A stretch of 64,000 bases of DNA from Haplodiscus bocki (taxonomy: Eukaryota): positions 30,256,001 through 30,320,000 of the forward strand of contig OZ296651.1 of the NCBI GenBank assembly GCA_965655095.1. The letters run 5' to 3'. This document shows positions 19,871-56,247 of the stretch, one piece after another. A program made the translations under genes and the position numbers. Positions within the stretch are counted from its first letter, which is position 1. Each line of letters begins with the position of its first letter. The notes beneath the pieces are model-generated. The model had not been told where the DNA came from and ran no database searches. It was given only the letters and a program-made list of their open reading frames with translations.

Positions 19871-19897
19871 AGTATCAAAAGGACAGTATCAGCTAAC

Positions 19898-20064: not shown

Positions 20065-20222
20065 CTGAGAAAACACAAAACATGAAAAGTTCGCAACCAT
20101 AAATGCGTCTGAGTTCAGATTAGCAATGAACTATGATGCTTAAAACTATATACTATCAGAATACTTGCAATTTCATGTGGAACCAAAACCATTTATTCAA
20201 CATTAAAACAGTCATATTTAAA

Positions 20223-24439: not shown

Positions 24440-24808
24440 CTGGAAAGTAAGTATCTGGGAGCCAAATTTTGTGCAAAAACTCGTGCGACAAAGTTATACT
24501 CTCATTTGATTCTTCAGCGAATTCCAGTCTTTTGTCCATCCAGTACTGTCGGAAAGCGAAGTCAACTCGGAAGCTCATGTCAGTCTCACTTATGGGCCCC
24601 AGACTGTCCACGTGCAGGGTTATGTCAACTTCGACGGGATCTCCTCCGAACTGAGGCCTAAGTCTCGAGTCATAGTCTTGCAACAATCCCGACAAAATTT
24701 TACTCGTTCTGAACATTTTGGCTTGTCTTTTGAACTCGGCGTCTTGATCTTTGGCTAATTCGGAATTGGAGTATCTGATGCTCTCACTGATCATTGAAGA
24801 ACCCATGC
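24440..24808 (-). CDS. Cys-loop receptor exon (N-terminal helix, loops D and A)
   Basis: TSKILSGLLQDYDSRLRPQFGGDPVEV..DFAFRQYWMDKRL..KIWLPDTYFP. Acceptor tttcag|gc at 24809 (phase 1), donor g|gtgaga at 24439 (phase 1). Confidence 0.95.
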
Positions 24809-35362: not shown

Positions 35363-35449
35363 CTACCCGACTTTATTACTTCTCACGCCGGATTTTTCTG
35401 GGTGAGTTATACAGTTAATTGTCCTTTTTTTCTCGGTTAGCTCTCTATG

Positions 35450-37652: not shown

Positions 37653-37653
37653 A

Positions 37654-38161
37654 TTAGGCTTCTGTTACGTATTGTTTCATATTTACTAACATGGTTGCAA
37701 TAAAAAATTGTTCAATTCCATCTTTGGTGTGTTCAAATGAGTTCTCTAGCTTGTGATGGGGCCGACCATAGTCTGCTGTCTCTGGTTTAGCCGTGAATAT
37801 CCATCGGCTTTGTTGAGGGATTGGTTGTCCGATGAATATTAAGGGGTAGTCAGGGTTGAAATTGTAGTAGCAGGTGTCCACGCGAACTTTTTTTATGCAA
37901 TTTCATATAAGTTAGTAGCTCGTCGAATATTGATAAGTAGGTAGAATTTCCCAGGTTCAGTAAGTGATATAGACTGCAAAATTTTTTGCTATGTTTTTCA
38001 ATTTCCACAATTACTTTTTGTCCATTAAGAATATCAGAGCTGCTAATAAGTAAGCGTAGCGGAGGGCAACAATGGCATTCCTGCCATTGAATTCTGTGTA
38101 TAGTTACTAAACAATTTTTGCAAGGAGGTTTCCACTGAAGATCAACTTCAAATTTTGTCAT
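37654..38161 (-). pseudogene. Accessory ORF of unknown function directly upstream of env (Cys-rich N-terminus, one frameshift)
   Basis: ORFs 37850-38161 and 37654-37881 overlap. CKNC..CHCC motif. The stop lies 1 nt before the env start. Confidence 0.5.
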
Positions 38162-38540
38162 TTATAAATAATTTTGTAAAGCAATACTACTGTTACAAGG
38201 TACAACTGTTCGTAATTCTTCTATTTCGCAAGTGGTTCTGTAGGATCTCTTAAAGCGTCGAATATATTCGCTGAGTTTTTCAGTTTTTGTTTAGTTTTAT
38301 TGGGAAATTCATTCGACCGGAAATTTAATATCGTGACGTCAGCCAAAATTTTTTGAGCGAATCATTTCAATTTCTTGGGATATCGTGTTTCTCAATATTT
38401 CTCAATATAGTGTTTTATTACCGAAACCAATTATGGCGTCCTTTTGTTTATCAGTTTATTTGGTTTCTGTCAATCTGCTCAATGATTACGTCAGCATCTG
38501 AATGACCGAAAATGTCGAATTTACACAAATTTCAAGGTTT

Positions 38541-38834
38541 TTGCGAGTATTTCAGATCATGGATTGTGTTCGTGCCATTATTGATAGTGTGTTTGAGCTT
38601 TTGTGTTGTCCAGACGGAACAACAGTCTTCAAAGAGTCAAAGAAAGTCAGTTTTTCCCCTGTGAGGGATGTTCGGTGCCCTTTCATTCAAGCCGCTACTG
38701 GTGGAAGTCCAACAACTGTTACTCCTGGGTGGCCGTATTATCTTGTAATTTCCCGCTTTCTGGCAATTAGCGTGTTAGCGTCAGTCTTTTTCCTGCTCAA
38801 GAGATGTCGTGCTGTTCATGATACTCCTGAATAA
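38541..38834 (+). CDS. Possible small antisense membrane protein inside the provirus
   Basis: MDCVRAII...YLVISRFLAISVLASVFFLLKR: one hydrophobic helix followed by basic residues. Same strand as the JmjC gene. Confidence 0.3.
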   Translation: MRVFQIMDCVRAIIDSVFELLCCPDGTTVFKESKKVSFSPVRDVRCPFIQAATGGSPTTVTPGWPYYLVISRFLAISVLASVFFLLKRCRAVHDTPE

Positions 38835-39118
38835 GAATACCTTTGTTTGACTGTTTTAAGCAATGCGTTTAGTGTTATTGAGCGTAGCACCCCTTTCAGG
38901 GCCTTTTCTGTCCCAAACGATTACAATTCAATAATAATACCACCTGTTACGTAGTTCATTTAATACCTTAGGTGTTTGTTATATTCGAGCTATCATTCAA
39001 TTATTCTGCTGTCTGTTTTGTTTCTCTTGCCACGTTCTGGCATATCCATTGTTGATAAACACGATGATGAGATCAAGAGTATTAACTTTTTCTAGATTGA
39101 AAAACGGATCAGTTCAAT

Positions 39119-39916
39119 TTGTTGTTGAATTTATGTCAATCACATTGTAAAGAAGTGGATGCCGTTGGAGAGGAGGAAGCTGCCAGATTCGAGGCTGTGA
39201 CAGTTGTTCGGGGCATTTCATGTTCCTATAGGGTTCCCCTGTTGCAGGACTTGGCAGTTAGCTGTGTTGATTTGTCCATTTTGAAGATGCATTTCACTAA
39301 TTGGGGGGAAGAGAAGAATATTGTGCTATTTCCTGATACAACATTGATTACAGCGTTAATGCCAACTGAGAATGTGGATAATGTTTCACAGTGGTTCAAC
39401 AGTGCAATAATACCTCTGGAGGTTGTACATGATCCTATTTTATTAGTGGCAACAGGCAATTGTCTCACTGGTTTTCACATGGATGACAAACGTCCCACTG
39501 AAGTTGTGGCGTCTTTGTTACGTGGACGGAAATTATGGTTATTCGCCACTCCTGGGTCCAAGTCTGCTTCTGCATTAGTGAAAAGACCCGAAAATACTCA
39601 CTTCGAACATTTCATGGGGGATATGGTTTTTGGCCGTTATAAAGACTTGTTGTATTGTCTACAGGAGCCTGGTGATACTATTTGCTTACCTGCGCGAACC
39701 GTACACTTTGTTTGAAGTGTTACTCCAGATAATGGGTGGAACTGTTTATTAAGTCACAATGTACGACATGAAGAAAATGAAGCAGTTTCTATGGAAAGAA
39801 AGGCCTTCAATCGTTGTAGTGATCAGCGGTCTCGGACAGTCCAGGGGAAGCGCACAAAGCAATCTGGTGTTACAAGGAAGCGGTTCACACCTCGAAGAAG
39901 ATCGAAGACTTCTTAG
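39119..39916 (+). pseudogene. JmjC-domain 2OG/Fe(II) oxygenase, antisense within the provirus (premature stop at 39713-39715)
   Basis: LTGFHMD (HxD), LLRGRKLWLF, and QEPGDTICLPARTVHFV (distal His). The frame continues after the stop to a basic tail RKRFTPRRRSKTS* at 39916. Confidence 0.85.
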
Positions 39917-40550
39917 TGGTTAAAAGTTTTTTATTCTTTTCTTTCTTGTCCGCTCGTAGTGTCAAAAGTCAATTTTTGTAGTGGGTTGTTTTAAGTAGGA
40001 AATGTAAAACTGCTTTTCCGCGTTAGTCGTTGTAGGGAGGCTCCATTTATACCCTATTGTGTAGTACTCTTTCTAGGCTATCGGTTGAGAGTATTAAGTC
40101 TCCGATATCTGTCTTTGTCTTTGCAATCGCAGTGGCACAAGTTATTTTTCCGGGACTTCGAAAAAATAATTTTTTGTACATTTTGGATGTTAACAGTCAT
40201 TAGTAATGCTCCCACAGGTATGTGAAGTACCCTATCGTGTAGAACGCGTTTTCACCTGTCCCTTGAGCTATTTTACTTTGTTTTGTGGTTTCAGCTTCGG
40301 TCATTCGCAGTGGCACAATACTTCAATTCTTTGTCCTTTTTTGTAAGATAATCAAATTTCTGTCTCGTGTTTCCTTTGTAGACCGTCTAAAAGCCTGTCC
40401 TTGATCTCCATGTGTAGAAAATTTTCATTCAGTGGGTTTTCCGGGGTATTTTTTGTCGGAAGGATCCAGAATGTCTTTGAAATTTTCAAATTTTTTTGCG
40501 TGGTTTCTTTTCTAGGTATCTTCGGCGGATTGAGCTATTGAGCTGACGGT

Positions 40551-41510
40551 TTAAGCGCGGAAGCATACTGTTACTTGCACCGGGGAATGCTGAAAAACTT
40601 CTAATAAAATGTTATGTACTACTTGCCTTCTCAGGCTGTCAAGTCCACATCCAAGTTTTGGGAGGCGGATATGTTGGATTCTGTTCATTTTTGCGTGGTT
40701 TCGCATCAGTATGAGGCTCGTTCTGAGAGATTTGTAGAATGGTTGGTGGAAGACTTTGTACTTTGTTACTAAATTGTAGATCCAATTTCTTGAATACTTG
40801 TCATAGTACGCAAAAACTGATCCTGGAATGAGGTTTCTCGATGATTTTCTTTTACTTTGTGGGAAAAGTTGGTTAAATTTCGCTGCTATTCCTGCTCCCA
40901 TGTAGAAGTCTGAGGAAACGCAGTGTCCCATACCACAATGTTGTTGGAAAAGGTTTTCCTCTACAATTCTAACATTCTTCGTTGTGTCTCTTCGTTGAAG
41001 TTCATTGAGTTCTGGGCGTGGTTTCTTTGTCATAGATCCACTCTGTTGTGCTCCCTTTCGCTGGACAAATTGCATCTGCTGGCGTTCCTTTCGACGGTTA
41101 TTCAGTAGGTCTACGAAATTGCGTGCTTCTTTAGTTTCGCCTTGAGTTGTGCGTTTTGAAGGTTGTCTTTGGAATTGTCTCCCTGCAGCTTCTAATACTC
41201 TGAAGCTTCTGCTTTTTGTTTGATTTTGTTCCTGTACTCTTTCTGAGCGTCTCAGTGGATGGATTGGTTCTACGTATTCGTCAGATTCTTCAGAAGAGTC
41301 TGGAATTTGGGCTGTAAGATTGTCTGGTGTTAACACTCTTCTTGGTGCTACTATCTGTTTTCTATCCCTTGGATTGGGTTGTGGTATTTCACCTGCTAGT
41401 GCTGGAATAGCGATTGGCGCTGGTACAGCTGGGGCTGGTGCAGCTGGTGGTTGTTGCGTTGTTCCAAAGGAGATTGAAACTCTAACTGGGCTATCAAAGT
41501 TTGTTGTCAT
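40551..41510 (-). CDS. Pol C-terminal extension with TARG1/OARD1-type macrodomain (domain ~40551-40980)
   Basis: GHCVSSDFYMGAGIAAKF, IYNLVTK..HQPFYKSLRTSL..MRNH and LPKLGCGLD align motif by motif with OARD1/TARG1. In frame with integrase, separated by one TAG. Confidence 0.9.
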   Translation of the reverse strand: MTTNFDSPVRVSISFGTTQQPPAAPAPAVPAPIAIPALAGEIPQPNPRDRKQIVAPRRVLTPDNLTAQIPDSSEESDEYVEPIHPLRRSERVQEQNQTKSRSFRVLEAAGRQFQRQPSKRTTQGETKEARNFVDLLNNRRKERQQMQFVQRKGAQQSGSMTKKPRPELNELQRRDTTKNVRIVEENLFQQHCGMGHCVSSDFYMGAGIAAKFNQLFPQSKRKSSRNLIPGSVFAYYDKYSRNWIYNLVTKYKVFHQPFYKSLRTSLILMRNHAKMNRIQHIRLPKLGCGLDSLRRQVVHNILLEVFQHSPVQVTVCFRA

Positions 41511-41534
41511 ACTTGTTTTTTCATGGTTTATTCC

Positions 41535-43196
41535 CTATTCCAGTAAACCTGGGAGGCCTTTGTCAAAGTAGTCTTGTTCTCCTCTGTACTTGTCTGAGAG
41601 TGGGTCTGTTTGGAAGTTCTCTGGGTCAATGTCTCCAATATCATCCACCTGATATTGAGGAATGATTGGTCTCGTCCTGATTCGGTGAACTATTTGTGTA
41701 TAGTTGGTACCTACTTTCCCAATCATGTAATTGAAGTCAGTTAGTACTTTTTCGATGCGGTACATTGCCAACCATTTCTGAATGAGTTTAGGACTGAAAG
41801 CTGACTGTTCCGTCAATTTTGGGTTCAAGAGTAGGCAATAAGTTTGTTCTTTTAGGGGGTTTGCTCTCGCTTTTTGGTCGTAGTATCGTCTGTATCTTGT
41901 AAATGATTTTGCGAGGCTTTCTTTTGCCTTTGAAAACTGTTTCAACATTTCGTCTTTTAGTGAGTCAACAAAGTCGTAGTTGAATGCTGCTTTTTGTATG
42001 CAACTACTATAGAATCTCAAATCTAGAGGTTTCATCGGTTCTCTACCATGGAAAAGAACTGTTGGAGAGCATCCAATTGATGTATGGTACGAAGTGTTGT
42101 GGATGAATGTAGCCAATGGGACATATTTATGCCAATTTGTGAAACTTTGGTTGCTGTTGAGCTTCAGAATTCTAGCCACAGCTGCAGGTGATCTTTCAAC
42201 TACTCCTATCGTTTGTGGGTGTTTCAGCGAAGCGTGAGAGATTTTTATCTCTGGGAGTTGCGTAAGTTCGTGGAGGAGTTCCGAAACAAATTGAGTTCCC
42301 AAGTCTGACATTATTTCTTTTGGGATATAACTGTGGTTGAACAATATGGAGACTAGTGCTGAAGCTACTGTTGAGGCGCTCATTGTAGTTAGTGGTACTG
42401 CGAAAAGGTATTTTGACAAAACATCGATCGCTGTTAAGACGTATTTGTAGGGTGTCGTTGGGTACGCTCCCATAATGTCAATGTGCAATATGTCTCCTGG
42501 AAATGAGGTTGTTGAGGAGATCTCTTGTAGTGGTGTTTTTACTCGCGACAAATGTATTTGTTTCAGTTGAAGGCATGAAGAGCAGTTTCTGATATAGTCC
42601 ACAATTTTCTTAATATAATTTGGGCAGTAGAAGCGTTTTCTGAATTCTCCAATTGTTCTTGTTATTCCCAAGTGGCCGCCTGTCGGTGAATTATGAATTC
42701 GGTATAGTATCTCCTTCAGCATGTGTTTAGGAACACATAGTTGGTCGTAAAGGGTTGTACCATCGTGGTTATAGTAGTTGCGTTTTAGGATCCCATTGTC
42801 AATTATTAACCTGGGTAGTTGTTTTATGTATTTTTGCTCATCTCCCGTTGAGTATATATTATTATCAGGAATGTTTCCGTCTGTTTTCCAATTTTTAACC
42901 GTCGTCAACAGTGTATCTTTTTGTTGCTCATTTTGTAGCTGTGCCATCGTCGTTTCTAGTTCCGGGTAAGTATCCATTGGGTTTGCTGACTGTATCGCGT
43001 TTATGGTTTCTTCACGGGTTTTGTATTTGATTAATTCTATGTCGGTACAGTTTTCTGTATTTCCTTTCAGTCGTTGCGAGGTTTGCTCATAGTTTCCAGA
43101 TTTTTTCAGCGTTATCAACGTGTTGATATCTACCACGTGCAGTAATCCATCCGGGAAGTCATCTGCAAAAAGTTCATTGATCGTGTTATCTGGCAA
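41535..43196 (-). CDS. pol: Gypsy integrase
   Basis: HHCC motif (HNSPTGGH..CSSC) and DDE core HIDIMG / SDLGTQF / VVERS. Confidence 0.92.
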   Translation of the reverse strand: MPDNTINELFADDFPDGLLHVVDINTLITLKKSGNYEQTSQRLKGNTENCTDIELIKYKTREETINAIQSANPMDTYPELETTMAQLQNEQQKDTLLTTVKNWKTDGNIPDNNIYSTGDEQKYIKQLPRLIIDNGILKRNYYNHDGTTLYDQLCVPKHMLKEILYRIHNSPTGGHLGITRTIGEFRKRFYCPNYIKKIVDYIRNCSSCLQLKQIHLSRVKTPLQEISSTTSFPGDILHIDIMGAYPTTPYKYVLTAIDVLSKYLFAVPLTTMSASTVASALVSILFNHSYIPKEIMSDLGTQFVSELLHELTQLPEIKISHASLKHPQTIGVVERSPAAVARILKLNSNQSFTNWHKYVPLATFIHNTSYHTSIGCSPTVLFHGREPMKPLDLRFYSSCIQKAAFNYDFVDSLKDEMLKQFSKAKESLAKSFTRYRRYYDQKARANPLKEQTYCLLLNPKLTEQSAFSPKLIQKWLAMYRIEKVLTDFNYMIGKVGTNYTQIVHRIRTRPIIPQYQVDDIGDIDPENFQTDPLSDKYRGEQDYFDKGLPGLLE

Positions 43197-43277
43197 TTTG
43201 GCACGAAAGTCTATTTCTATCTCTCTAATAGGTATGCGATCGGTAGGTTTCAGTTCAATTGTTTCGTTTGGATCAGC

Positions 43278-45002
43278 TTACAGGCGAGATAAGAAATCTG
43301 CTGCTGCATTTGCTTTTCCAGGTATGTGCGCAACAACTATGTTGAATGCTGTTACTCTATCGATATAATTCCAAAGTGATGGAGGGATTGTTTTTGCTTG
43401 AAAGAATCTCGTTAGGCTTTTGTTGTCAGTCAAAATTAGTACGGTTTTTTCACTTTCCCAAATGAAATGTGAAAATGTTTCCAGTGCAAAGTAAAGTGAT
43501 AGGAATTCTTTGCAATATATTGACATTTTCAGTTGCGCCGTGTTAAATACCTTTGATCCAATTAATACGGAAGCGTATGATTTAACAGATTCTCCTTTGT
43601 CGTTTTTTACGTAGTCTTCAATCATTAGCACAAAACCACTAGAATGGCAGCTCGCATCACAAACAATTGCGTACTGTAAACCGGGTTTAGCTAGTCTAAG
43701 CGTTTGAGTAGCCGTCGTTTGTAGCTTTTGTTTCAGCGTTTCAAAGGCTTCCATAATGTCTTCTGTGAGCTCGAATGATACATTCTTTCTGAGGAGTTTG
43801 TAAAATGGTATCAAGTGTTCATTCAAGTTTGGAATGAAGTTCCGAAAGAATTGCAGGAATCCAATCAATCTTTTCACTTGTTTAACTGATTTTGGTTCTT
43901 CTGAAGTTCGCAGAAACTTTTCGATCTTCTCTTTTTCCGGTTTAAAGCCTTCTTTAGTAATGACATTAACTAGAAAACTAACTTGTTCAGATCCAAATAT
44001 ACATTTTTCTGGTGACAATTTGAGTCCTGATCGTCCAAGGCATTGGAAAATTTTTCTGAGGTAAGGTAGTAGTTGCTCAGCGGAGTCTACTCCACATCCA
44101 ATGTCATCCATGAATTGGGTGCAGATGTTTGCAGAAAGGCATGGTTCTAGGTAGTTTCGTACAAATGCACTGAATCCTGTTACCGCTCTATTGAGTCCTC
44201 TAGTTAGTCTCTGATAGGCCATTGTTCTTGATGCAAAATTAAACGCTAGTAGTTGTACTGATAGTGGGTCTGCCATTTGGACACAATGGTAGGCTTGGGA
44301 ACAATCGAGTTGTGATTTTCCTGCAGAATGAGCTGTTGTGTCAGCCATTTTAGAAATTGGAAAGTTGTTATTATGATAGTCATGAAGCAGTAAGTGGTTG
44401 ATTCTTCTCAAGTCAACTAAAATTCTGAGTTCTCCGTTTGTTTTACGATGGGCAAAAATTGGGCTATTATATTTCGAGTGGTTGAGACTTGTAATTAACT
44501 CAAAGTACTGCAGAAGGGCTAATTCGACCTGAAGTTGTTCTCGTAAGTGAATAGGTGTTGGTGGACTCTGAGTATAGACTGGTTTGTCATGTTCAGGCGT
44601 AAGTTTCATTGTTATTTCTGAATTGTAGCCAACATCAAATCTGTGTTTTGCAAAAATAACAGAAAATTCAACTAACAGCTCTTCAACTTGTTGTTTTTGC
44701 GATTCATTTAGTACGGGGTCTTTCCACTTGAATCTTCGGAGAAAATGGTTTCTATAGCTCTTGTCTGTTTGGAGGTCAATCTTGTCCAATTCTTGAAGTT
44801 TTGATAGTTCTGTATAAAATCGTTTTTCAACACCTTGTAATTTTTCTGGGTTTTTACAGGTTTCAGGCGTTGGGAACCAAAATTTTCTATATTCGGGTTT
44901 TGGGCGAGGTGGTTGGGAGTCTGAACTGAATTCCTCATCAATGATGAGTTGATTTATTTCCTGAGCAAAATTTTCAGGAATTCGTAGTTTTGCCAATGTC
45001 AA
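43278..45002 (-). CDS. pol: Gypsy reverse transcriptase + RNase H
   Basis: LRILVDLRRIN, LDCSQAYH, QFMDDI, CDAS, CKEF, TDNKSL and NAAADFLSR. In frame with integrase across a single TAA. Confidence 0.95.
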   Translation of the reverse strand: MTLAKLRIPENFAQEINQLIIDEEFSSDSQPPRPKPEYRKFWFPTPETCKNPEKLQGVEKRFYTELSKLQELDKIDLQTDKSYRNHFLRRFKWKDPVLNESQKQQVEELLVEFSVIFAKHRFDVGYNSEITMKLTPEHDKPVYTQSPPTPIHLREQLQVELALLQYFELITSLNHSKYNSPIFAHRKTNGELRILVDLRRINHLLLHDYHNNNFPISKMADTTAHSAGKSQLDCSQAYHCVQMADPLSVQLLAFNFASRTMAYQRLTRGLNRAVTGFSAFVRNYLEPCLSANICTQFMDDIGCGVDSAEQLLPYLRKIFQCLGRSGLKLSPEKCIFGSEQVSFLVNVITKEGFKPEKEKIEKFLRTSEEPKSVKQVKRLIGFLQFFRNFIPNLNEHLIPFYKLLRKNVSFELTEDIMEAFETLKQKLQTTATQTLRLAKPGLQYAIVCDASCHSSGFVLMIEDYVKNDKGESVKSYASVLIGSKVFNTAQLKMSIYCKEFLSLYFALETFSHFIWESEKTVLILTDNKSLTRFFQAKTIPPSLWNYIDRVTAFNIVVAHIPGKANAAADFLSRL

Positions 45003-45697
45003 TAAATGTGGATCAATTGGGTTAATGTTTCTGCTTGTTGGGGTGTGAGGAATTTGAATAATGCTATGTCAGAGTTTAGTGGTATTGTTATTTCAATATT
45101 TTGCAAGTTCAAAGCTGAAATGAACAAGTTTCCATTAGAATCCGTTCTAGAAAGGGATGACGTGATGCACAAGCCTGTTTTGTCTTCAAAGTTCATTTTT
45201 GGTTCTACTATTTCGCACACGTCAGTGAATATCTTCTTCGAAAGTAATCTACATTAAAGGGTTGTTTGTTGGTTGGGGCGATCGTTATTTTTTCCGAAGT
45301 TCTAACTGAATAATTGGGTTTCGTGTGCTTTTCCGTTGGGTTTGGTTGAAACTCGTTCAATTGAAGTCATAGGTCCTGTAGTTTTGAGGTTTTCCTTAAG
45401 GTGTAATTCAATCGAGTTGTTTTTGAAGAATGGGTTTCCCAGTATAATACTATTCGTGCTTGGCAAAACTAAAAATTTGTCGTTGAATAAATGTTTTGCT
45501 ATTGAGAATGTTAGTTCAATTTGGCCACGCACAGGTATAAGCTGTCCTGAAGCTAGTTTGACTTTACTGACCTCTGAAGGTGGAGGACGTTGGGTTCCAA
45601 ACGATTTTAGTTCATGGGAGTCCTTTTCACTAATAGCATTTGCACAGGCACCAGTATCTATTAATGCTTTTCTCTGTTGAGTGTTGGAGAATTTCAA
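44999..45697 (-). pseudogene. Aspartic protease followed by a dUTPase-like relic
   Basis: ALIDTGACANAIS and IILGNPFF (45302-45697), then ITIAPNQQ..IVEP..ISALN..ITIP..IA (45000-45300). The dUTPase-like call is an inference. Confidence 0.75.
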
Positions 45698-45801
45698 GGG
45701 GACATATGAAAGAAGGTCTCCTTCAAGAGAGATGCATGCTGTTATTCCGTTCTCCTGAGTTGTTTGTGCTTCCTGTGGTGCGTCGTCATACTGGCGTGGC
45801 T

Positions 45802-46128
45802 TTATTCGAATTTTGGTGCTGTTTGGTAAGGGATTTGTTGATTTCTATTTGCTGGTTTTCTCTGATTGCAATCTCTGGCGTAATGGTTTGGGTATCCACA
45901 TGTAAAGCATATTTGTTTTAAGTAGCTAGTTTGTGCAATGTGTCTGTTATTCGAAGATTCTTGTATCTGTGGGTTGCTGAATCTGTTGTAGTTTATGCCG
46001 TAGTAGCCTCTGTTGTTGTTGAATCTACCTCGTCCTCTATTGTTAAAGTTTCCACGTCCTCTAAATTCTCTTTGATTGTTGAATCTGTTGTTTCCTCTAT
46101 AGTAATTCTGTTGGTAGGTATAGTAAAC
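45802..46128 (-). pseudogene. gag: Gag C-terminal fragment (nucleocapsid)
   Basis: N/R/G-rich segment and CCHC knuckle CFTCGYPNHYARDC. The N-terminal part is deleted. Confidence 0.85.
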
Positions 46129-46217
46129 CCAATAAGAAGGGTTCAAATATATGTTGCATGCTTTGGACTAATCAACTAATTAGTTAATTTGGTTCAATCT
46201 TTTTAGAAAATATTACA
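46129..46217 (-). repeat. Truncated 5' LTR remnant (longer copies at 49502-49629 and 52920-53047)
   Basis: About 4 differences in 89 bp from 35274-35362. Ends attaca followed by TSD atggg. Confidence 0.9.
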
Positions 46218-46466
46218 ATGGGTTTACCAGTCCCGAAGTAGTTTCATTGATTTTAATTCATTCTACTTTCATTCTTTGGGTACTCAATTCATATATTTTT
46301 TGTTTAATATGATTTCTAAAGCCCTTCTTTCATATTTCAGACTAAATCTACTTTAGATGGTAATTGTACTGATAGTTTTCTTTACTGAAAAGTACAATGA
46401 AATTGTTGAAGTGGTGGCACAAGAACGAAGCGACAAATGTGCTTACGAACAATTTGCAACTCTTAC

Positions 46467-46647
46467 CGCTTTTAACGTCGGCGGATGTAGACCGTGGAGG
46501 CCTCACACCTAAGCTTTCTCGTCTCATTCTTCGTTCCCTGCCGTCCTGACTGGAAGCCAATTTCAACCCCGGGTTCAACAATAAGCACAGAAGAAAGAGG
46601 CAGAAGATTTTCAGCATTGTAAACGCTGGTCCACTACTAATAGCCAT
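46467..46647 (-). CDS. Signal-peptide exon of the Cys-loop receptor, copy 1
   Basis: MAISSGPAFTMLKIFCLFLLCLLLNPGLKLASSQ..DVKS; 181 nt ending at donor g|gtaaga (phase 1), which fits the phase-1 acceptor at 24808. Linkage is inferred from phase and from that exon's lack of a signal peptide. Confidence 0.75.
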
Positions 46648-47599
46648 TGCTGCACTAATAAAAGCTCACAACAAAAGCAATCAAGTAAAAAGATGCAATT
46701 CCACCGAATAAAAAAAGTATCTACAAGTTATGGTGCACATAAATGAACAAACTGGCATTGTTTTTCAGGTTGTGGGAAGAGACTTCCTGGTATTTTATGC
46801 TGAGTGTTCAAACTAAATTCTGCGTAGTTACTTCGACAGCTTTCTGTTCAATCCGTAAAATCGATAAAAAGATCAATATTGGACTTCTACACATCATCTA
46901 TTCTAAAAAAGAACTTCAAAATACTCCTAAAGAAAAAGTTAATTTATTGATGTGCTTCGTTTCATACAGCATCACATACAAGTTTAAAAACCACATTAGA
47001 GAGACCCTCCAAAAGCTCAAGCTGGTTTGTTGAAGTAGGACCCTCAAGCAAGTCATTAGAAATGAAGTAAAGTAACAGAAAATTCCTTCGGCAATCAGTT
47101 GAACAGAGTTATTTCTCAGTTGTAGTAGTAGTAGAAAAGATTCTATAATAAGAATATAAACAATGAAATAAACCCAAAGGGAGCCTGGACGGGAAAATGA
47201 AAAGACCATGACAATTAACAGCAATTACATTCAATAAAACGTTGACAGGTTTGTCGTTCATAAGAATCTATGAAATAGTTCCATATTATGAATTTCAAGT
47301 TCTTCTTCACTAGACTGTGATCGTTGTGATAAACTTATCAAATATGTGGACAAGAATGTTAGAGCCTCTTATCGAAAACTCTGTTGGGTAGCCCGCAAGA
47401 GATTACAGAGAGAGGTAGAAAGTGGAAGATCACCGGAGGAGACAGGGCACTTCTGGATCTGGAGACGATCTCCCTTCTTCCAGGTTGCAACATTCCATAT
47501 ACACATTGGAATTTCACTGCCCCCGCCCCCTATCCCCACAAAAATATTCATAATTAATTATTCATTTATTAAGTTAAAAATTTCGACATTATTTTTCGC

Positions 47600-47881
47600 C
47601 GCTTTGTAATGTTCCCCTACGAAGTTTTTCGGTAGTGAGACAACAAATTTTCTATAGAAAATCATGATATTCCCCTCTTAAGCATACAATTTTTCAATAC
47701 CCGAAATTAGTGACGCACTAAAGGGTTCCCCAACGAAATGTTTCGGTACTGTGAGACAAAACAATTCTGACGGAAAATCGTGATACCCTCCCCCTCTCTT
47801 TTCCCTAACATTTGTCGAAATCAGAAATTTTTTAAAACACAGAAGGGTTCCCCTATGTAAAATTACGGTACTGTGAGACAA
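47600..47881. repeat. ~107-bp satellite-like repeat (also 51020-51300, 56247-56420; related at ~13290-13520 and ~13940-14005)
   Basis: Repeated ttcggtactgtgagacaa..aaaatc(g/a)tgata.ccc and gaagggttcccc motifs. Confidence 0.65.
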
Positions 47882-49501
47882 GAAAGAAAGACTTTATTTT
47901 CCACATTCGCATCTTAATTGACACATAAACTTGAAAGAAATATCCAGCATATGCACATGTAGAGGACCCTCCATAATGTCAAGCTTTTCGAGAGAGGACC
48001 TGAAAGCTCCAAAGCTATGTAGAAGCATTTGTTAGTTTAGTTTCTCAGACTTTGAAATATGAGTTCGGCTGGTGTCTCAGGGCAACTGTTTTTTGCTTCT
48101 CTTAACTTATGCATTAGTTGGTTTTCTGACTATTGAAGTATGTTATCGGTAGAGTAATAATTTGCGATGGAGTAATTTAATACTTTAGAACCGCGGTTTT
48201 TTATAGACTGATCTTCTCGCAAATTAGAAGTACGAAGATGGTAAAAGGCACCGCTACTTACACTCCTCGTTTCATGAACATTAACCCGTGTCTTTTAGAA
48301 GCTGTTAAGAGAATAGGAGCAGTTTTCGCGCACTGATTGAAGACAGAATTTAAGAAGCTCCATAGCGTACAACTCGAACACATTTAAAAACCCATTTTGG
48401 AAGAAAAGTTCTCGACTAGGGTGAAATTGCGGCTCAAAGTGAATTAAGCTGAGTATTTATTTTTGAATGATGTAAATGGGGTTCAACCGGTGTCTTGATG
48501 TACAACCATACACCAACAAACCAAATGTGAAGATAGGTTCGATATATTTCCGGTAATACTTCAATAAAGTCCCCCTGGGTACGTAATGTCTCAGTCGAGC
48601 TATGACGGACAATTGCTTCGAAAGTTTTTTCACTATGTGTTTGATATGGGAGTGAAACGAGAGTTTAAGATTAATATGAATCTCCAAATACTTTGCACTT
48701 TCGTCAAATACTAAATTTACGCCCATAAAGGGAACATTAGATGTTTGGTTGAATTGCAGCATTTGTGTTTCTGGAATGTTGAGAGCTAGCTTATTTAAAC
48801 TCATCCACGATGGAAGACTCATTAGTTCTTTGTCGAGACACGAGGTCAATGATTTCCTTTTAGAGTATATCAAGTTTGCGTCATCAGCAAAAAGATACGT
48901 GGTCACATTTGGGCAACATTTAGGAAAGTCACTTATGTAAATAATAAAGAGTAAGGGCCCCAGTGTGGAGCCCTGTGGAACACCACAATTGATCGGCTCA
49001 AAGTTTGACCATTTATTGTTTACAAATACAGCCTGTTTCCTGTTTCTTAGGTATGATTCAAACCAATTATTCACAATTCCCCTGACACCGCATTGTGACA
49101 GTTTTTCCAATAATCTGTAATGATTAATGGTATCAAAAGCTTTTCGAAGATCTAGCATAATACTGGTAAATTCTTCATCAGTGCCTGATCGTATGTTCTC
49201 AATGATCTCTATTAGCGCATCTACAGTTGAATGCTTAGATCTAAATCCAAATTGCTTCTCAAAAAGTATGTCCTTTTTGCCGAGGAATTTGTTTAGACGA
49301 TTGTACATGATTTTTTCCAGTACATTACTCAAAACTGGTAGTAAAGAAATTGATATAAAAATATCAACGTCGGCTTTACTGCCAGATATAAATAGTGGAA
49401 TTACTTTGGAATTTTTCAGACAGTCTGCAATTTCGCCATGACTAAACGTTTGATTTATTAACTTTTGTATATATGGGACTATAGCCAGATCTGAAATCTT
49501 T
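47882..49501 (-). mobile_element. CR1-group LINE 3' half (RT + 3' end), copy 1
   Basis: QFGFRSKHST, LDLRKAFDTINH, GVPQGSTLGPLLF and LFADD. 3' end aataaa followed by a (cttt)n tail. Confidence 0.9.
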
Positions 49502-49878
49502 GGGCTTTTCTTATTAGTTAAATATGAGTTAATAATAGCTCCAATAAGAAGGGTTCAAATATATGTTGCATGCTTTGGACAAATCAACTAATTAGTTAAT
49601 TTGGTTTAATCTTTTTAGAAAATATTACAATGGGTTTACCAGTCCCGAAGTAGTTTCATTGATTTTAATTCATTCTATTTTCATTCTTTGGGTACTCAAT
49701 TCATATATTTTTTGTTTAATATGATTTTTAAAGCCCTTCTTTCATATTTCAGACTAAATATACTTTAGATGGTAATTCTACTGATAGTTTTCTTTACTGA
49801 AAAGTACAATGAAATTGTTGAAGTGGTGGCACAAAAACGAAGCGACAAATGTGCTTACGAACAATTTGCAACTCTTAC

Positions 49879-50059
49879 CGCTTTTAACGTCGGCGGATGT
49901 AGACCGTGGAGGCCTCACACCTAAGCTTTCTCGTCTCATTCTTCGTTCCCTGCCGTCCTGACTGGAAGCCAATTTCAACCCCGGGTTCAACAATAAGCAC
50001 AGAAAAAAGAGGCAGAAGATTTTCAGCATTGTAAACGCTGGTCCACTACTAATAGCCAT
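49879..50059 (-). CDS. Signal-peptide exon, copy 2
   Basis: Intact ATG, frame and g|gtaaga donor. One L-to-F difference from copy 1. Confidence 0.6.
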
Positions 50060-51300
50060 TGCTGCACTAATAAAAGCTCACAACAAAAGCAATCAAGTAA
50101 AAAGATGCAATTCCACCGAATAAAAAAAGTATCTACAAGTTATGGTGCACATAAATGAACAAACTGGCATTGTTTTTCAGGTTGTGGGAAGAGACTTCCT
50201 GGTATTTTATGCTGAGTGTTCAAACTAAATTCTGCGTAGTTACTTCGACAGCTTTCTGTTCAATCCGTAAAATCGATAAAAAGATCAATATTGGACTTCT
50301 ACACATCATCTATTCACATCATCAAAAAAGAACTTCAAAATACTCCTAAAGAAAAAGTTAATTTACTGATGTGCTTCGTTTCATACAGCATCACATACAA
50401 GTTTAAAAACCACATTAGAGAGACCCTCCAAAAGCTCAAGCTGGTTTGTTGAAGTAGGACCCTCAAGCAAGTCATTAGAAATGGAGTAAAGTAACAGAAA
50501 ATTCCTTCGGCAATCAGTTGAACAGAGTTATTTCTCAGTTGTAGTAGTAGTAGAAAAGATTCTATAATAAGAATATAAACAATGAAATAAACCCAAAGGG
50601 AGCCTGGACGGGAAAATGAAAAGACCATGACAATTAACAGCAATTACATTCAATAAAACGTTGACAGGTTTGTCGTTCATAAGAATCTATGAAATAGTTC
50701 CATATTATGAATTTCAAGTTCTTCTTCACTAGACTGTGATCGTTGTGATAAACTTATCAAATATGTGGACAAGAATGTTAGAGCCTCTTATCGAAAACTC
50801 TGTTGGGTAGCCCGCAAGAGATTACAGAGAGAGGTAGAAAGTGGAAGATCACCGGAGGAGACAGGGCACTTCTGGATCTGGAGACGATCTCCCTTCTTCC
50901 AGGTTGCAACATTCCATATACACATTGGAATTTCACTGCCCCCGCCCCCTATCCCCACAAAAATATTCATAATTAATTATTCATTTATTAAGTTAAAAAT
51001 TTCGACATTATTTTTCGCCGCTTTGTAATGTTCCCCTACGAAGTTTTTCGGTAGTGAGACAACAAATTTTCTATAGAAAATCATGATATTCCCCTCTTAA
51101 GCATACAATTTTTCAATACCCGAAATTAGTGACGCACTAAAGGGTTCCCCAACGAAATGTTTCGGTACTGTGAGACAAAACAATTCTGACGGAAAATCGT
51201 GATACCCGCCCCCTCTCTTTTCCCTAACATTTGTCGAAATCAGAAATTTTTTAAAACACAGAAGGGTTCCCCTATGTAAAATTACGGTACTGTGAGACAA

Positions 51301-52919
51301 GAAAGAAAGACTTTATTTTCCACATTCGCATCTTAATTGACACATAAACTTGAAAGAAATATCCAGCATATGCACATGTAGAGGACCCTCCATAATGTCA
51401 AGCTTTTCGAGAGAGGACCTGAAAGCTCCAAAGCTATGTAGAAGCATTTGTTAGTTTAGTTTCTCAAACTTTGAAATATGAGTTCGGCTGGTGTCTCAGG
51501 GCAGCTGTTTTTTGCTTCTCTTAACTTATGCATTAGTTGGTTTTCTGACTATTGAAGTATGTTATCGGTAGAGTAATAATTTGCGATGGAGTAATTTAAT
51601 ACTTTAGAACCGCGGTTTTTTATAGACTGATCTTCTCGCAAATTAGAAGTACGAAGATGGTAAAAGGCACCGCTACTTACACTCCTCGTTTCATGAACAT
51701 TAACCCGTGTCTTTTAGAAGCTGTTAACAGAATAGGAGCAGTTTTCGCGCACTGATTGAAGACAGAATTTAAGAAGCTCCATAGCGTACAACTCGAACAC
51801 ATTTAAAAACCCATTTTGGAAGAAAAGTTCTCGACTAGGGTGAAATTGCGGCTCAAAGTGAATTAAGCTGAGTATTTATTTTTGAATGATGTAAATGGGG
51901 TTCAACCGGTGTCTTGATGTACAACCATACACCAACAAACCAAATGTGAAGATAGGTTCGATATATTTCCGGTAATACTTCAATAAATCCCCCTGGGTAC
52001 GTAATGTCTCAGTCGAGCTATGACGGACAATTGCTTCGAAAGTTTTTTCACTATGTGTTTGATATGGGAGTGAAACGAGAGTTTAAGATTAATATGAATC
52101 TCCAAATACTTTGCACTTTCGTCAAATACTAAATTTACGCCCATAAAGGGAACATTAGATGTTTGGTTGAATTGCAGCATTTGTGTTTTTGGAATGTTGA
52201 GAGCTAGCTTATTTAAACTCATCCACGATGGAAGACTCATTAGTTCTTTGTCGAGACACGAGGTCAATGATTTCCTTTTAAAGTATATCAAGTTTGCGTC
52301 ATCAGCAAAAAGATACGTGGTCACATTTGGGCAACATCTAGGAAAGTCACTTATGTAAATAATAAAGAGTAAGGGCCCCAGCGTGGAGCCCTGTGGAACA
52401 CCACAATTGATCGGCTCAAAGTTTGACCATTTATTGTTTACAAATACAGCCTGTTTCCTGTTTCTTAGGTATGATTCAAACCAATTATTCACAATTCCCC
52501 TGACACCGCATTGTGACAGTTTTTCCAATAATCTGTAATGATTAATGGTATCAAAAGCTTTTCGAAGATCTAGCATAATACTGGTAAATTCTTCATCAGT
52601 GCCTGATCGTATGTTCTCAATGATCTCTATTAGCGCATCTACAGTTGAATGCTTAGATCTAAATCCAAATTGCTTCTCATAAAGTATGTCCTTTTTGTCG
52701 AGGAATTTGTTTAGACGATTGTACATGATTTTTTCCAGTACATTACTCAAAACTGGTAGTAAAGAAATTGATATAAAAATATCAACGTCGGCTTTACTGC
52801 CAGATATAAATAGTGGAATTACTTTGGAATTTTTCAGACAGTCTGCAATTTCGCCATGACTAAACGTTTGATTTATTAACTTTTGTATATATGGGACTAT
52901 AGCCAGATCTGAAATCTTT
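51301..52919 (-). mobile_element. CR1-group LINE 3' half (RT), copy 2
   Basis: Duplicate of 47882-49501 with an extra 1-bp deletion near 51988. Confidence 0.9.
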
Positions 52920-53296
52920 GGGCTTTTCTTATTAGTTAAAATTGAGTTAATAATAGCTCCAATAAGAAGGGTTCAAATGTATGTTGCATGCTTTGGACTA
53001 ATCAACTAATTAGTTAATTTGGTTTAATCTTTTTAGAAAATATTACAATGGGTTTACCAGTCCCGAAGTAGTTTCATTGATTTTAATTCATTCTATTTTC
53101 ATTCTTTGGGTACTCAATTCATATATTTTTTGTTTAATATGATTTTTAAAGCCCTTCTTTCATATTTCAGACTAAATCAACTTTAGATGGTAATTCTACT
53201 GATAGTTTTCTTTACTGAAAAGTACAATGAAATTGTTGAAGTGGTGGCACAAGAACGAAGCGACAAATGTGCTTACGAACAATTTGCAACTCTTAC

Positions 53297-53477
53297 CGCT
53301 TTTAACGTCGGCGGATGTAGACCGTGGAGGCCTCACACCTAAGCTTTCTCGTCTCATTCTTCGTTCCCTGCCGTCCTGACTGGAAGCCAATTTCAACCCC
53401 GGGTTCAACAATAAGCACAGAAAAAAGAGGCAGAAGATTTTCAGCATTGTAAACGCTGGTCCACTACTAATAGCCAT
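53297..53477 (-). CDS. Signal-peptide exon, copy 3
   Basis: Intact ATG, frame and donor. Protein identical to copy 2. Confidence 0.6.
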
Positions 53478-54260
53478 TGCTGCACTAATAAAAGCTCACA
53501 ACAAAAGCAATCAAGTAAAAAGATGCAATTCCACCGAATAAAAAAAGTATCTACAAGTTATGGTGCACATAAATGAACAAACTGGCATTGTTTTTCAGGT
53601 TGTGGGAAGAGACTTCCTGGTATTTTATGCTGAGTGTTCAAACTAAATTCTGCGTAGTTACTTCGACAGCTTTCTGTTCAATCCGTAAAATCGATAAAAA
53701 GATCAATATTGGACTTCTACACATCATCTATTCACATCATCAAAAAAGAACTTCAAAATACTCCTAAAGAAAAAGTTAATTTACTGATGTGCTTCGTTTC
53801 ATACAGCATCACATACAAGTTTAAAAACCACATTAGAGAGACCCTCCAAAAGCTCAAGCTGGTTTGTTGAAGTAGGACCCTCAAGCAAGTCATTAGAAAT
53901 GGAGTAAAGTAACAGAAAATTCCTTCGGCAATCAGTTGAACAGAGTTATTTCTCAGTTGTAGTAGTAGTAGAAAAGATTCTATAATAAGAATATAAACAA
54001 TGAAATAAACCCAAAGGGAGCCTGGACGGGAAAATGAAAAGACCATGACAATTAACAGCAATTACATTCAATAAAACGTTGACAGGTTTGTCGTTCATAA
54101 GAATCTATGAAATAGTTCCATATTATGAATTTCAAGTTCTTCTTCACTAGACTGTGATCGTTGTGATAAACTTATCAAATATGTGGACAAGAATGTTAGA
54201 GCCTCTTATCGAAAACTCTGTTGGGTAGCCCGCAAGAGATTACAGAGAGAGGTAGAAAGT

Positions 54261-56247
54261 CCAATGATACAGTACAGTTCAATGATGCGAACTTCATTCT
54301 CGGTTACGTTCCTTCCAGATAATTTATTTAAATCCCTGTAAAACCGCTTGGGTTGTTTCATTTTACTCTCGAACATCCTGCTGTAGAAAAGATATTTGTC
54401 ACTTCTTATCAAGCGATTTGAACAGTTTCTCGAGGCAGTATACCGCAGTTTATTTGCCGATCTTGGGTTTGCAAGATATTGCTTCAGATATTTATCGCCA
54501 AGTAGAATTTGATTTTTATTCTTTTTGCTATACCAAGGTATATTGTTTTCGTTTTGGACGAATTGTTTTTCAACAGTAAAACTGACGGTGGTTTCGTTTA
54601 TCGCTTGAGTCAAAAGAGAGAAATTATCATTCACGTCTGAAGCAAATGGGGTGTGTAACAATCTTTCATGAAGACTACGCATGACTTTTTTTGAGTTATT
54701 ACTTTCTGCTCTTTTGTTCGACAGTATGGTGTTATCACTTTCGTTGCATAAAGATCTGTTATAGATAGATTTATTACATCATATGTTTTTTGCAAAATAC
54801 TATTCTGAAACACATGATCTAGAAGAGCTTTAGATACCGGAGTGACACGTGTTGGCTTTGCTATATGTTGGGTAAAGCCACGGAACAGCATTGATTCGAT
54901 ATAGTTGTTCGAAGCAGTATTGGTTTCGAGCAAACTGATAATCATATCCCCAACAATATAACAAGGGTGGTTGGGTTTTGCTAAAATCGAAAACCTTGTA
55001 GACATTTTTTGTATGAACGTTAGCTTATCACAAGATGGCGAGTTATACACACATGCAACTATAAAACAGTTTTTTGACGCATTTGTACCTTTCACTGCAA
55101 CTGCAGGTAAGCTCTCGTGAAATTCGACAACTTGATAGCGAGGCGATTTATGTACATGAATCCCAGAACACTGTTTCTATTGAATCCTGCGTGCGAAATC
55201 AACCTGTGATAGTCCTGTATTTCAAATAGACCCAACGTAGAGTCATCTGACAGCCACGTTTCTGTCAAACAAATAATAGACGGCTTGATTAATTTTTGAT
55301 CTTCAATAAACATCAATAGGTCGTCAAAATGACTTTCGAGCGATCGAATGTTCATATGAAAAAACCATTCATTACCTTCTACTTCTTGTTTTTTACTATT
55401 ACGAGGGTCTTCTACTGAAAATTTGGTTTATCAGCACATACAAGCATGACCAAACCCGGATCCCATTTGTATAATTCATGCAATGTATGAAAAACAAATT
55501 TATCATTATTGGTTTGATACACGATTATTTTCTCATTGATCATGTTTGCAGCTTTGACATCCGTTTTTTCTTTGAACGATTTTAGAAGACGCGCCCTCAG
55601 TTGAGTGATATCATCATCGATATAAATAGGCCTACCTGACTGATGTCGCGAACCACTTTTCTTTTTCATCAAACAGTTTTGTTTCTCTTCGGACAAACTT
55701 CACAGTAATAGGTTTACTTGATTGTCCTCTTGCAGGGAGACGATGGTATACACTAATATCACTCTTACAAATTTAAACACCTCTCCCTTCCACCACATCC
55801 ACAACCTGCTGATTTACATCCTCTCCTGTTTGCTCTTCCACACCAAATAATCTGACATTTTCTCTTCGTCCGTATTGTTCATTGGCATCCGACAAAATCA
55901 AATTTGAGAGTCTAGTCTCTTGTACTTTTGAATCAACATGAGTTTCCTTCCGCAACTTTTCAACTTCCGTAAAGGCACAGTAACCACAAAGAAGGTGTCG
56001 CTCACTGAAATTTTTTGGCAGTCCTGTAGTGAGCCAGACCGGTACCCATGCCACACATCCATTTCCATCTTGACCAGGTCCACTACACTCTATCAAGTGA
56101 TTCTTGCCATCTTCATCAGTAAACATTTCGTCTGATACACTAGTTTTCCTTTGAGTCACCTTCTTTGGAGGCATCACAATATGTAACTTTTTATTAAGTT
56201 TTTCACAACAAATAGGCTTTATCACAACAAGAATAAGTTTATCACAA
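54261..56247 (-). mobile_element. CR1-group LINE 5' half: ORF1 (PHD-like + RRM-type) and APE endonuclease
   Basis: ORF1 motifs IEC..C.AW..LLCGYC, EQYGRRENVRLFGV and IYIDDDIT. APE motifs MNIRSL, CLTETWL, IVGD and PTRVT..LLDHVF. Confidence 0.88.

What the first reader, a model, noticed from the sequence alone, without database searches (positions are those of the whole stretch)
46129..54260. Tandem triplication creates three intact copies of the receptor's signal-peptide exon
Each unit holds an exon with ATG, hydrophobic core and g|gtaaga donor (46467-46647, 49879-50059, 53297-53477). A candidate acceptor tgcag|caATG would make each exon 183 nt, so tandem inclusion stays in frame and would stack signal peptides. 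Alternatively the copies act as alternative first or mutually exclusive exons. Copies 2 and 3 share variants absent from copy 1 (L-to-F change, small cacatcatc duplication), implying two successive events rather than read error.
Basis: partly seen in the sequence, partly recalled or inferred. Interest (0 to 1): 0.7.

Follow-up and report, generated by a model that had tools for sequence, protein, structure and literature searches.

The report
Young tripled first exon of receptor
The start of a GABA/glycine-type chloride-channel receptor gene (likely promoter, signal-peptide exon and the first 249 bases of intron 1) stands three times in a row because a 3.4-kb piece bounded by two dead jumping genes was copied head to tail; this is a real but ordinary young structural variant, and whether the extra copies are used is untested.

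Summary
Window 46129-54260 is a head-to-tail repeat with a 3412/3418-nt unit, 99% identical, in 2.38 units. It carries three intact copies of a 181-nt minus-strand exon: ATG, signal peptide and a G|GTAAGAG donor. Copies 2 and 3 share the Leu19Phe change and a 7-nt insertion that copy 1 lacks.

The exon fits the phase of the next exon (acceptor at 24808) of a Cys-loop anion-channel gene. It is the only signal-peptide-like candidate in the 39 kb upstream of that exon.

An old Gypsy element with a CCCAT target duplication sits 249 nt into intron 1, and a LINE lies upstream. The repeated junction joins LTR base 129 to the middle of the LINE, and it occurs nowhere else in the genome. The upstream-most unit lost 2.3 kb, leaving a 16-nt filler. 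The 5' LTR after copy 1 was later cut down to 89 nt.

Contigs built from reads confirm that the segment has two different left neighbours. They cannot count copies.

No RNA data could be reached, so alternative first-exon use and in-frame stacking are both untested. With only 0.4-0.9% divergence, intact copies say nothing about selection.

Earlier notes of this scan report similar young first-exon repeats elsewhere in this genome. This is a new member of a known kind, of low interest.

The parts
46129..54260 (-). Whole tandem array, 2.38 units of 3412/3418 nt
   Evidence: Self-BLAST 99.3% and 98.8%; repeat families
46218..47423 (-). P1: 776 nt upstream of the ATG, exon-1 copy 1 and 249 nt of intron 1. 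This is the proximal copy, still joined to the rest of intron 1 through the Gypsy element
   Evidence: two SINE-like dispersed repeats at 47326-47124 and 47121-46930
46467..46647 (-). Exon-1 copy 1 (Leu19): ATG, signal peptide, phase-1 donor G|GTAAGAGT
49879..50059 (-). Exon-1 copy 2 (Phe19)
53297..53477 (-). Exon-1 copy 3 (Phe19)
46129..46217 (-). First 89 nt of the Gypsy 5' LTR, then a deletion junction into the element's interior (about position 1336 of an intact copy)
49501..49629 (-). First 129 nt of the same 5' LTR copied with P2. Its 3' edge (49501|49500) is the novel duplication junction
   Evidence: the junction is unique to this locus
52919..53047 (-). First 129 nt of the same 5' LTR copied with P3; second instance of the duplication junction (52919|52918)
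47880..49500 (-). R1: 3' half of a LINE (reverse transcriptase, tail ...AATAAAGTCTTTCTTTCTT), in the same orientation as the gene
   Evidence: Pfam RVT_1 3.8e-30; 88-92% identity to many genomic copies over exactly this span
51299..52918 (-). R2: second copy of the LINE 3' half
47424..47879 (-). s1: 456 nt between the LINE tail and P1, holding a very high-copy repeat. Copy s2 lies at 50843-51298
   Evidence: summed contig depth of 10^4-10^5 at 51020-51219
49630..50842 (-). P2 segment
53048..54260 (-). P3 segment; its left neighbour is the filler and the LINE 5' half, not s
54261..54276 (-). 16-nt filler at the left edge of the array, with no template elsewhere in the window
54277..56219 (-). 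U: 5' half of the same LINE. Intact copies elsewhere carry 242 nt between the end of U and the start of R
34881..46128 (-). Gypsy interior (35363-46128) and complete 482-nt 3' LTR (34881-35362), lying in intron 1
34876..34880 (-). CCCAT target-site duplication, 3' copy. The 5' copy is at 46218-46222 and is repeated at 49630-49634 and 53048-53052
24440..24808 (-). Exon 2 of the receptor: acceptor ttttcgtttcag|GC, start of the ligand-binding domain
   Evidence: Pfam Neur_chan_LBD 3.5e-20; tblastn of homologues
11936..20071 (-). Further receptor exons: about 20071-19898 (Cys-loop C-x13-C), about 17469-17164, and about 12265-11936 (TM1-TM3, PAR motif)

Best explanation
This is a young tandem segmental triplication at the 5' end of a Cys-loop anion-channel gene on the minus strand, with breakpoints in transposons. 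Shown: the ancestral order was LINE (U, 242 nt, R), then s, then P (upstream region, exon 1 and 249 nt of intron 1), then a Gypsy element in intron 1, then the rest of the intron. The segment from the middle of the LINE to base 129 of the Gypsy 5' LTR (R-s-P-LTR1-129, 3.4 kb) was then duplicated head to tail. That created one novel junction, LTR129|LINE, which is now present twice. Inferred: a first duplication was followed by a second through unequal exchange between the units, since copies 2 and 3 are the most alike. A 2.3-kb deletion with a 16-nt filler removed the LINE part of the upstream-most unit. A deletion of about 1.2 kb cut the 5' LTR after copy 1 down to 89 nt. Each copy keeps the same 776 nt upstream of the ATG, the same exon and the same donor. 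Each could therefore act as a first exon spliced to the acceptor at 24808. All would give the same mature protein, because Leu19Phe lies in the predicted cleaved signal peptide. I take the extra copies to be a recent, probably neutral structural variant and not an evolved device. Transcripts that start at copies 2 or 3 must also read through a sense-oriented LINE tail with an AATAAA signal.
For: Structure and identities. LTR identity and length: the 129-nt piece matches both ends of three other Gypsy copies and the match runs on beyond it; the LTR is 482 nt. One old insertion: CCCAT flanks the element, and all three copies end in CCCAT + TGTAAT. The three 5' LTR fragments share 3 differences from the 3' LTR, whereas the units differ from each other by 0.4-0.9%. 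LINE halves: U and R match the same full-length copies with 242 nt between them. Both junctions are unique in the genome and the filler has no local template. Gene: Neur_chan_LBD and Neur_chan_memb, GABA-A and glycine receptors as best solved relatives, C-x13-C and PAR. Exon 1: the phase fits; it is the only ATG, hydrophobic, phase-1 GTRAG candidate in 39 kb upstream of exon 2; homologues carry 38-70 residues with a signal peptide ahead of the stretch that aligns to exon 2. Raw-data contigs show both left neighbours of P.
Against: No RNA evidence at all: no listed run is on record as RNA, so exon 1 to exon 2 splicing and any promoter activity are inferred. The read contigs do not bridge the LTR129|LINE junction in the rows shown, and they cannot separate two copies from three. 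In sample S1, the contig that enters P from s carries copy 3's letters at the three sites where the assembly's copy 2 is private. That could be allelic variation, gene conversion or a collapsed graph path. The order of the duplications and deletions is a most-parsimonious reading; a single complex template-switching event would give the same layout. The difference between 5/1302 and 23/3411 changes is not significant (Fisher p = 0.29).
Confidence: 0.62

Rival explanations
1. A working array of alternative first exons or promoters. All three modules fire, each first exon is spliced to 24808, and the array raises or diversifies expression of the receptor. It would be a nascent version of variable-first-exon loci.
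For: Each copy keeps 776 nt of identical upstream sequence, an ATG, an open frame and an identical strong donor. The phase fits exon 2.
Against: The copies are too young (0.4-0.9%) for intactness to show selection. The proteins would be identical after signal-peptide cleavage. Upstream starts must cross a sense LINE tail with AATAAA. There is no RNA data. The breakpoints fall in dead transposons, as expected of an accident.
Confidence: 0.18
2. In-frame tandem inclusion. Transcription starts upstream, TGCAG|CA serves as an acceptor, and two or three 183-nt copies are spliced in series or in a mutually exclusive way, which stacks signal peptides.
For: 183 nt is a multiple of three, and G + CA gives Ala with no stop. 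AG|CA directly precedes the ATG in all copies.
Against: The tract before the AG is purine-interrupted (ttttattagtgcag) and weaker than the real acceptor of exon 2 (ttttcgtttcag). No upstream non-coding exon is known. A second hydrophobic core inside the mature N-terminus would probably upset the topology of the ligand-binding domain (inference). Nothing was tested.
Confidence: 0.05
3. An assembly artefact: haplotypes or reads wrongly laid in tandem, with only one or two copies in the real genome.
For: The read contigs cannot count copies. The S1 contig lacks copy 2's private letters. No second assembly of this species could be reached.
Against: There are no gaps. Three mutually distinct copies follow a nested variant pattern, and Y1 and Y2 differ at 13 sites. 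The left edge, with its own filler, and the s|P adjacency are both seen in read-derived contigs, so P has two different left neighbours in raw data. Only one false join could be explained by a haplotype mix-up.
Confidence: 0.08
4. The ORF is not the receptor's first exon. It could be a chance ORF or belong to something else, with the real first exon elsewhere, possibly beyond the window.
For: There is no transcript evidence. No family or homologue matches the peptide. No recognisable orthologue lies within 20 kb upstream of exon 2 in the nearest available relative.
Against: The phase is correct and the donor is strong. The peptide has the typical n-h-c layout with an A-S-S|Q cleavage context. 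It is the only such candidate in 39 kb. Exon 2 has no signal peptide of its own, yet the protein needs one. Signal peptides diverge fast, so a blank in a relative whose exon 2 is only 75% identical means little.
Confidence: 0.15

Closest known systems
Tandem segmental duplication expanded by unequal exchange, with breakpoints in transposable elements (non-allelic recombination, or replication-based template switching of the FoSTeS/MMBIR type; named from general knowledge)
   Same: Head-to-tail units, one recurrent novel junction, an edge with a short untemplated filler, nested divergence among the units, and breakpoints inside a LINE and an LTR.
   Different: Nothing essential differs. The founding junction joins unlike sequences (LTR to LINE) with at most one base of microhomology, so homology between repeats did not make it. 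Only the later expansion fits homologous unequal exchange.
Variable-first-exon loci such as clustered protocadherins and UGT1A (from general knowledge)
   Same: Several tandem modules of promoter plus first exon, each ending in a donor, lie upstream of shared downstream exons.
   Different: Those arrays are old and diverged, encode different protein parts and have proven promoter choice. Here the copies are 99% identical, differ by one signal-peptide residue, and their use is untested.
Tandemly duplicated, mutually exclusive internal exons of Cys-loop receptor genes (for example insect Rdl exons 3 and 6; from general knowledge)
   Same: Exon duplication within a gene of the same superfamily, with an exon length that keeps the frame (183 nt from the candidate acceptor).
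   Different: Those are internal exons with proven acceptors, and they encode parts of the mature receptor. Here it is the ATG and signal-peptide exon with its upstream region, and the acceptor is only a candidate.
Other young first-exon tandem repeats noted by this scan in the same genome (s1-369389, tripled first exon of SF3B3; s1-366753, 2-kb duplication of a PKG exon with its upstream region)
   Same: Same genome and same kind of event: a young tandem copy of a gene's start.
   Different: Different loci. I did not re-examine them, so they are leads and not support.

Membership tests
Tandem segmental duplication | Head-to-tail copies with one and the same novel junction between the end and the start of the unit | tested here: met
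   LTR base 129 is joined to the LINE middle at 49501|49500 and again at 52919|52918. The spanning match occurs only at these two places in the genome.
Tandem segmental duplication | Present in raw sequence data, not only in the assembly | tested here: inconclusive
   Read-derived contigs show P next to s and P next to the filler and LINE 5' half. No listed contig bridges the LTR129|LINE junction, and copy number cannot be read from the contigs.
Cys-loop ligand-gated ion channel, GABA-A/glycine-receptor-like anion branch | Ligand-binding and transmembrane domains of the family | tested here: met
   Pfam Neur_chan_LBD (3.5e-20 and 1.2e-13) and Neur_chan_memb (4.3e-29). The best solved relatives are GABA-A beta and glycine alpha subunits at about 1e-31.
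Cys-loop ligand-gated ion channel, GABA-A/glycine-receptor-like anion branch | Cys-loop C-x13-C, and the P-A-R motif before TM2 (the anion-selectivity signature, from established knowledge) | tested here: met
   CPMELEYFPLDTQNC and IPARASLAITTVL.
Cys-loop ligand-gated ion channel, GABA-A/glycine-receptor-like anion branch | Complete gene, with TM4 and an N-terminal signal peptide joined by splicing | not testable with these tools
TM4 was not located by tblastn. There is no RNA data.
Variable or alternative first-exon array | Each first exon has its own active promoter and is spliced to the common second exon | not testable with these tools
   Only the potential is shown: identical 776-nt upstream sequence, donor and phase.
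Mutually exclusive or tandemly included internal exons | A functional acceptor ahead of each copy, and a frame-preserving length | tested here: inconclusive
   The length of 183 nt keeps the frame. The acceptor ttattagtgcag|CA is only a motif match and looks weaker than the acceptor of exon 2.
Ty3/Gypsy LTR retrotransposon insertion (the bounding element) | TG...CA long terminal repeats, a target-site duplication and a polypurine tract before the 3' LTR | tested here: met
   The LTR runs TGTAAT...TTTACA over 482 nt, the duplication is CCCAT, and the purine-rich ...AAGTCGGGTAG precedes the 3' LTR. The 5' LTR is cut after base 89, so the copy is defective.

The most novel reading that the evidence does not exclude
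The three promoter and first-exon modules are all active. They form a newborn variable-first-exon array on a neurotransmitter-receptor gene, giving higher or differently regulated expression, or a minority of in-frame stacked-exon transcripts. That would catch the birth of an alternative-first-exon locus by a transposon-bounded duplication.
Probability: 0.12. Interest if true: 0.45.

Novelty: new member of a known kind. Interest (0 to 1): 0.2.

Why it matters
The locus is a cleanly readable example of how dead transposons set the breakpoints of a local duplication that multiplies a gene's start. The target-site duplication, the single recurrent junction, the filler and the nested variants allow the order of events to be reconstructed. 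If the extra modules are transcribed, it would show the first step towards an alternative-first-exon locus. If they are not, it is a neutral young variant. Either way the mature receptor is unchanged, and similar events are noted elsewhere in this genome, so the general significance is small.

Tried and rejected
1. Reading X as an LTR and the array as an LTR-internal-LTR tandem. Rejected: the LTR is 482 nt, only its first 129 nt (or 89 nt) are present, and the rest of X is unique.

2. Reading the 89-nt repeat at 46129-46217 and 35274-35362 as a giant target duplication or as a short LTR. Rejected by the other genomic copies, where the match runs on beyond it.

3. Copy number from contig depth. 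In run X3 the figures 61, 88 and 132 look like 1:2:3, but they do not fit the expected effect of the variant sites, and the tool itself warns against using depth. I did not use them.

4. A local template for the 16-nt filler. None found in the window.

5. An orthologous exon 1 in the nearest reachable relative (ENA contigs, exon 2 at 75% protein identity). Neither tblastn nor DNA similarity found one within 20 kb upstream. There was only an unrelated signal-like ORF.

6. Independent assemblies through exact look-up of the 99-aa and 93-aa ORFs. Nothing on record.

7. The representative-protein search with exon 2. It gave homologues, but not this species' own annotated protein, so no annotated N-terminus was available for comparison.

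8. A literature search for first-exon tandem duplications. Nothing specific turned up.

9. Joining the exons into a spliced protein for a search.

10. The word-index protein search. Not used: no RNA run holds the exon, so a transcript-derived hit was unlikely and the search is costly.
Full report
OBSERVATION

Repeat finding and self-BLAST show that 46129-50842 matches 49541-54260 at 99.26% over 4721 nt. They also show that 46129-47423 matches 52959-54260 at 98.8%. The window contains no N.

The layout is X1 (46129-47423), Y1 (47424-49540), X2 (49541-50842), Y2 (50843-52958) and X3 (52959-54260). That is 2.38 units of 3412/3418 nt.

The exons lie on the minus strand. Window 46647>46467, 50059>49879 and 53477>53297 each give a 60-codon peptide beginning MAISSGPAFTMLKIFCLF(L/F)LCLLLNPGLKLASS.... 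One further base and G|GTAAGAGT follow, and ATTAGTGCAG|CA precedes.

- Leu19 (CTT) in copy 1 against Phe (TTT) in copies 2 and 3.
- A 7-nt insertion shared by copies 2 and 3.
- 183 nt from the candidate acceptor.

In full, copies 2 and 3 share 8 substitutions and the indel against copy 1. Copy 2 has 3 private changes and copy 3 has 2. Y1 and Y2 differ at 13 sites.

THE GENE

On the minus strand downstream, Pfam finds Neur_chan_LBD in 24432-24827 and 19892-20119, and Neur_chan_memb in 11864-12271. The best solved relatives are GABA-A and glycine receptor subunits. The Cys-loop C-x13-C and the PAR motif before TM2 are both present. Homologues map to four exons without stops.

Exon 2 begins at 24808 behind ttttcgtttcag, with GC completing a codon. 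The last G of the candidate exon 1 makes this codon GGC, so the frame fits.

Exon 2 has no signal peptide. Homologues carry one in the 38-70 residues ahead of the aligned part.

I scanned the 39 kb upstream of exon 2 on the minus strand for ATG ORFs with a hydrophobic core and a phase-1 GTRAG donor. The scan returned only the three copies, each from Met1 or Met11.

The peptide and the unique DNA around it occur nowhere else in the 1.5-Gb genome.

That this exon is the receptor's first coding exon is therefore a well-founded inference, not a demonstration.

ANATOMY OF THE UNIT (MINUS ORIENTATION)

A search of the genome with X showed that its last 89 nt recur in pairs 8-13 kb apart. Fetching those pairs showed that the piece is the start of a Gypsy LTR that begins TGTAAT, and that the similarity continues beyond 129 nt. 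Against another copy, the LTR is 482 nt long: the window's 3' LTR is 35362>34881.

The element in the window is flanked by CCCAT on both sides (46222>46218 and 34880>34876). All three copies of the exon segment end in CCCAT followed by the LTR start. One old Gypsy insertion, 249 nt into intron 1, therefore predates all the duplications. The three 5' LTR fragments share three differences from the 3' LTR, whereas the units differ from each other by only 0.4-0.9%.

After LTR base 129, copies 2 and 3 continue straight into the 3' half of a LINE: 49500>47880 and 52918>51299. This half carries RVT_1, has the tail ...AATAAAGTCTTTCTTTCTT, and is sense to the gene. It is followed by 456 nt of other repeat-rich DNA (s) and then by the next exon segment.

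Upstream of the array lies the 5' half of the same LINE (56219>54277). In intact copies elsewhere the two halves are separated by 242 nt.

The junction LTR129|LINE is found only at these two places in the genome. The left edge (LINE, a 16-nt filler, then P3) is found once, and the filler has no template in the window. The first 60 nt of P have weak relatives elsewhere. The s|P boundary is therefore simply where the left-edge deletion ended, not a natural boundary.

After copy 1 the LTR stops at base 89 and joins the Gypsy interior at about position 1336 of an intact copy.

HISTORY

Shown steps are marked; the rest is inferred.

1. Shown: the order LINE, s, P, Gypsy, rest of intron existed first.
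2. Shown: a 3.4-kb segment from the middle of the LINE to LTR base 129 was duplicated head to tail, creating one novel junction.
3. Inferred: a second round, most simply unequal exchange between units, gave three. The tree (copy 1,(copy 2, copy 3)) supports two steps, though the rate difference is not significant (p = 0.29).
4. Inferred: a 2.3-kb deletion with filler removed 242 nt + R + s from the upstream-most unit. A 1.2-kb deletion trimmed the 5' LTR after copy 1.

A single complex template-switching event cannot be excluded, but the graded divergence speaks for separate events.

RAW DATA

Only four runs (two samples, one study) hold the exon. None is on record as RNA, and all are kept as contigs.

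Laid on 48420-54419, a 1289-nt contig (three runs of sample S1) runs from P into s (49600-50888). In sample S2 a contig ends exactly at the start of P (50842), and a 100-nt contig without mismatch covers 54231-54330, across the left edge. That last contig has 30 letters on the P side, one short of the tool's own bridging criterion.

P thus has two different left neighbours in raw data, which means at least two copies. The rows shown do not bridge LTR129|LINE, and depth cannot be used, so three copies rest on the assembly's three distinct variant sets.

Unexplained: the S1 contig carries copy 3's letters at the three sites where copy 2 is private. This could be allelic variation, gene conversion or a collapsed graph path.

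CONSEQUENCES

Each copy keeps 776 nt of identical upstream sequence, the exon and the donor, so each could serve as a first exon. Products would differ only at residue 19, inside the predicted cleaved signal peptide (cleavage context A-S-S|Q; my reading of the sequence).

Transcripts starting from copies 2 or 3 would have to pass a sense LINE tail with AATAAA.

The in-frame stacking idea is formally correct: 183 nt, with G+CA giving Ala. It depends, however, on an unproven and rather weak acceptor and on an unknown upstream exon.

At this divergence about one to two changes are expected per exon and one is seen, so intactness says nothing about selection.

COMPARISON AND VERDICT

This is an ordinary kind of event: a local tandem duplication with breakpoints in transposons, later expanded and trimmed. 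It resembles variable-first-exon loci only in layout.

Earlier notes of this scan report other young first-exon tandem repeats in the same genome (s1-369389, s1-366753). I did not re-test them. My boundaries differ: the 3' end is at 34881, not 34482, and the 5' LTR is truncated.

I only described the Gypsy copy. 

This is a new member of a known kind, of low interest.

Noticed in passing
window 34881-46217: The Gypsy element in intron 1 is defective. Its 5' LTR stops at base 89 and joins the interior at about position 1336 of an intact copy, a loss of about 1.2 kb that includes the rest of the LTR and the leader. The target duplication is CCCAT.
   Followed up: partly
window 51020-51219 (copy at 47600-47800): The 456-nt spacer s holds an extremely abundant repeat. 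Summed contig word depth there is 6e4 to 6e5 in all four runs, with many contigs that skip or replace parts of it.
   Followed up: no
window 47326-47124 and 47121-46930: Two adjacent SINE-like pieces of about 200 nt lie in the region upstream of the exon. Dozens of genomic copies match them at 76-84% identity. Only about 280 nt directly upstream of the ATG are unique.
   Followed up: no
window 46545-46520 (minus strand), within exon-1 copy 1: Just after the predicted signal-peptide cleavage site the peptide reads QDGRERRMRRES. The clustered arginines look like dibasic (furin-type) processing sites, so there may be an N-terminal propeptide.
   Followed up: no
window 49760, 49761, 49835: In sample S1 (three runs), the contig that enters the exon segment from s carries copy 3's letters at the sites where the assembly's copy 2 is private. 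This points to allelic variation, gene conversion between copies, or a collapsed graph path.
   Followed up: partly
L035/L036/L037 (ENA ERZ25071366 ctg20321l, ERZ25878734 ctg23490l): The nearest reachable relative has the orthologous exon 2 (75% protein identity) and exon 3. There is no detectable counterpart of exon 1 or of the array within 20 kb upstream. An unrelated signal-like phase-1 ORF lies 6 kb upstream of its exon 2.
   Followed up: partly
window 54277-56219 and 47880-49500; L022-L031: The LINE family is about 3.86 kb long and abundant: 1489 and 4429 first-look candidates for its two halves, with the scored copies 86-92% identical. The copy here is split by the rearrangement. In R2 a 1-nt deletion (at 51988) shortens the reverse-transcriptase ORF relative to R1.
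   Followed up: partly
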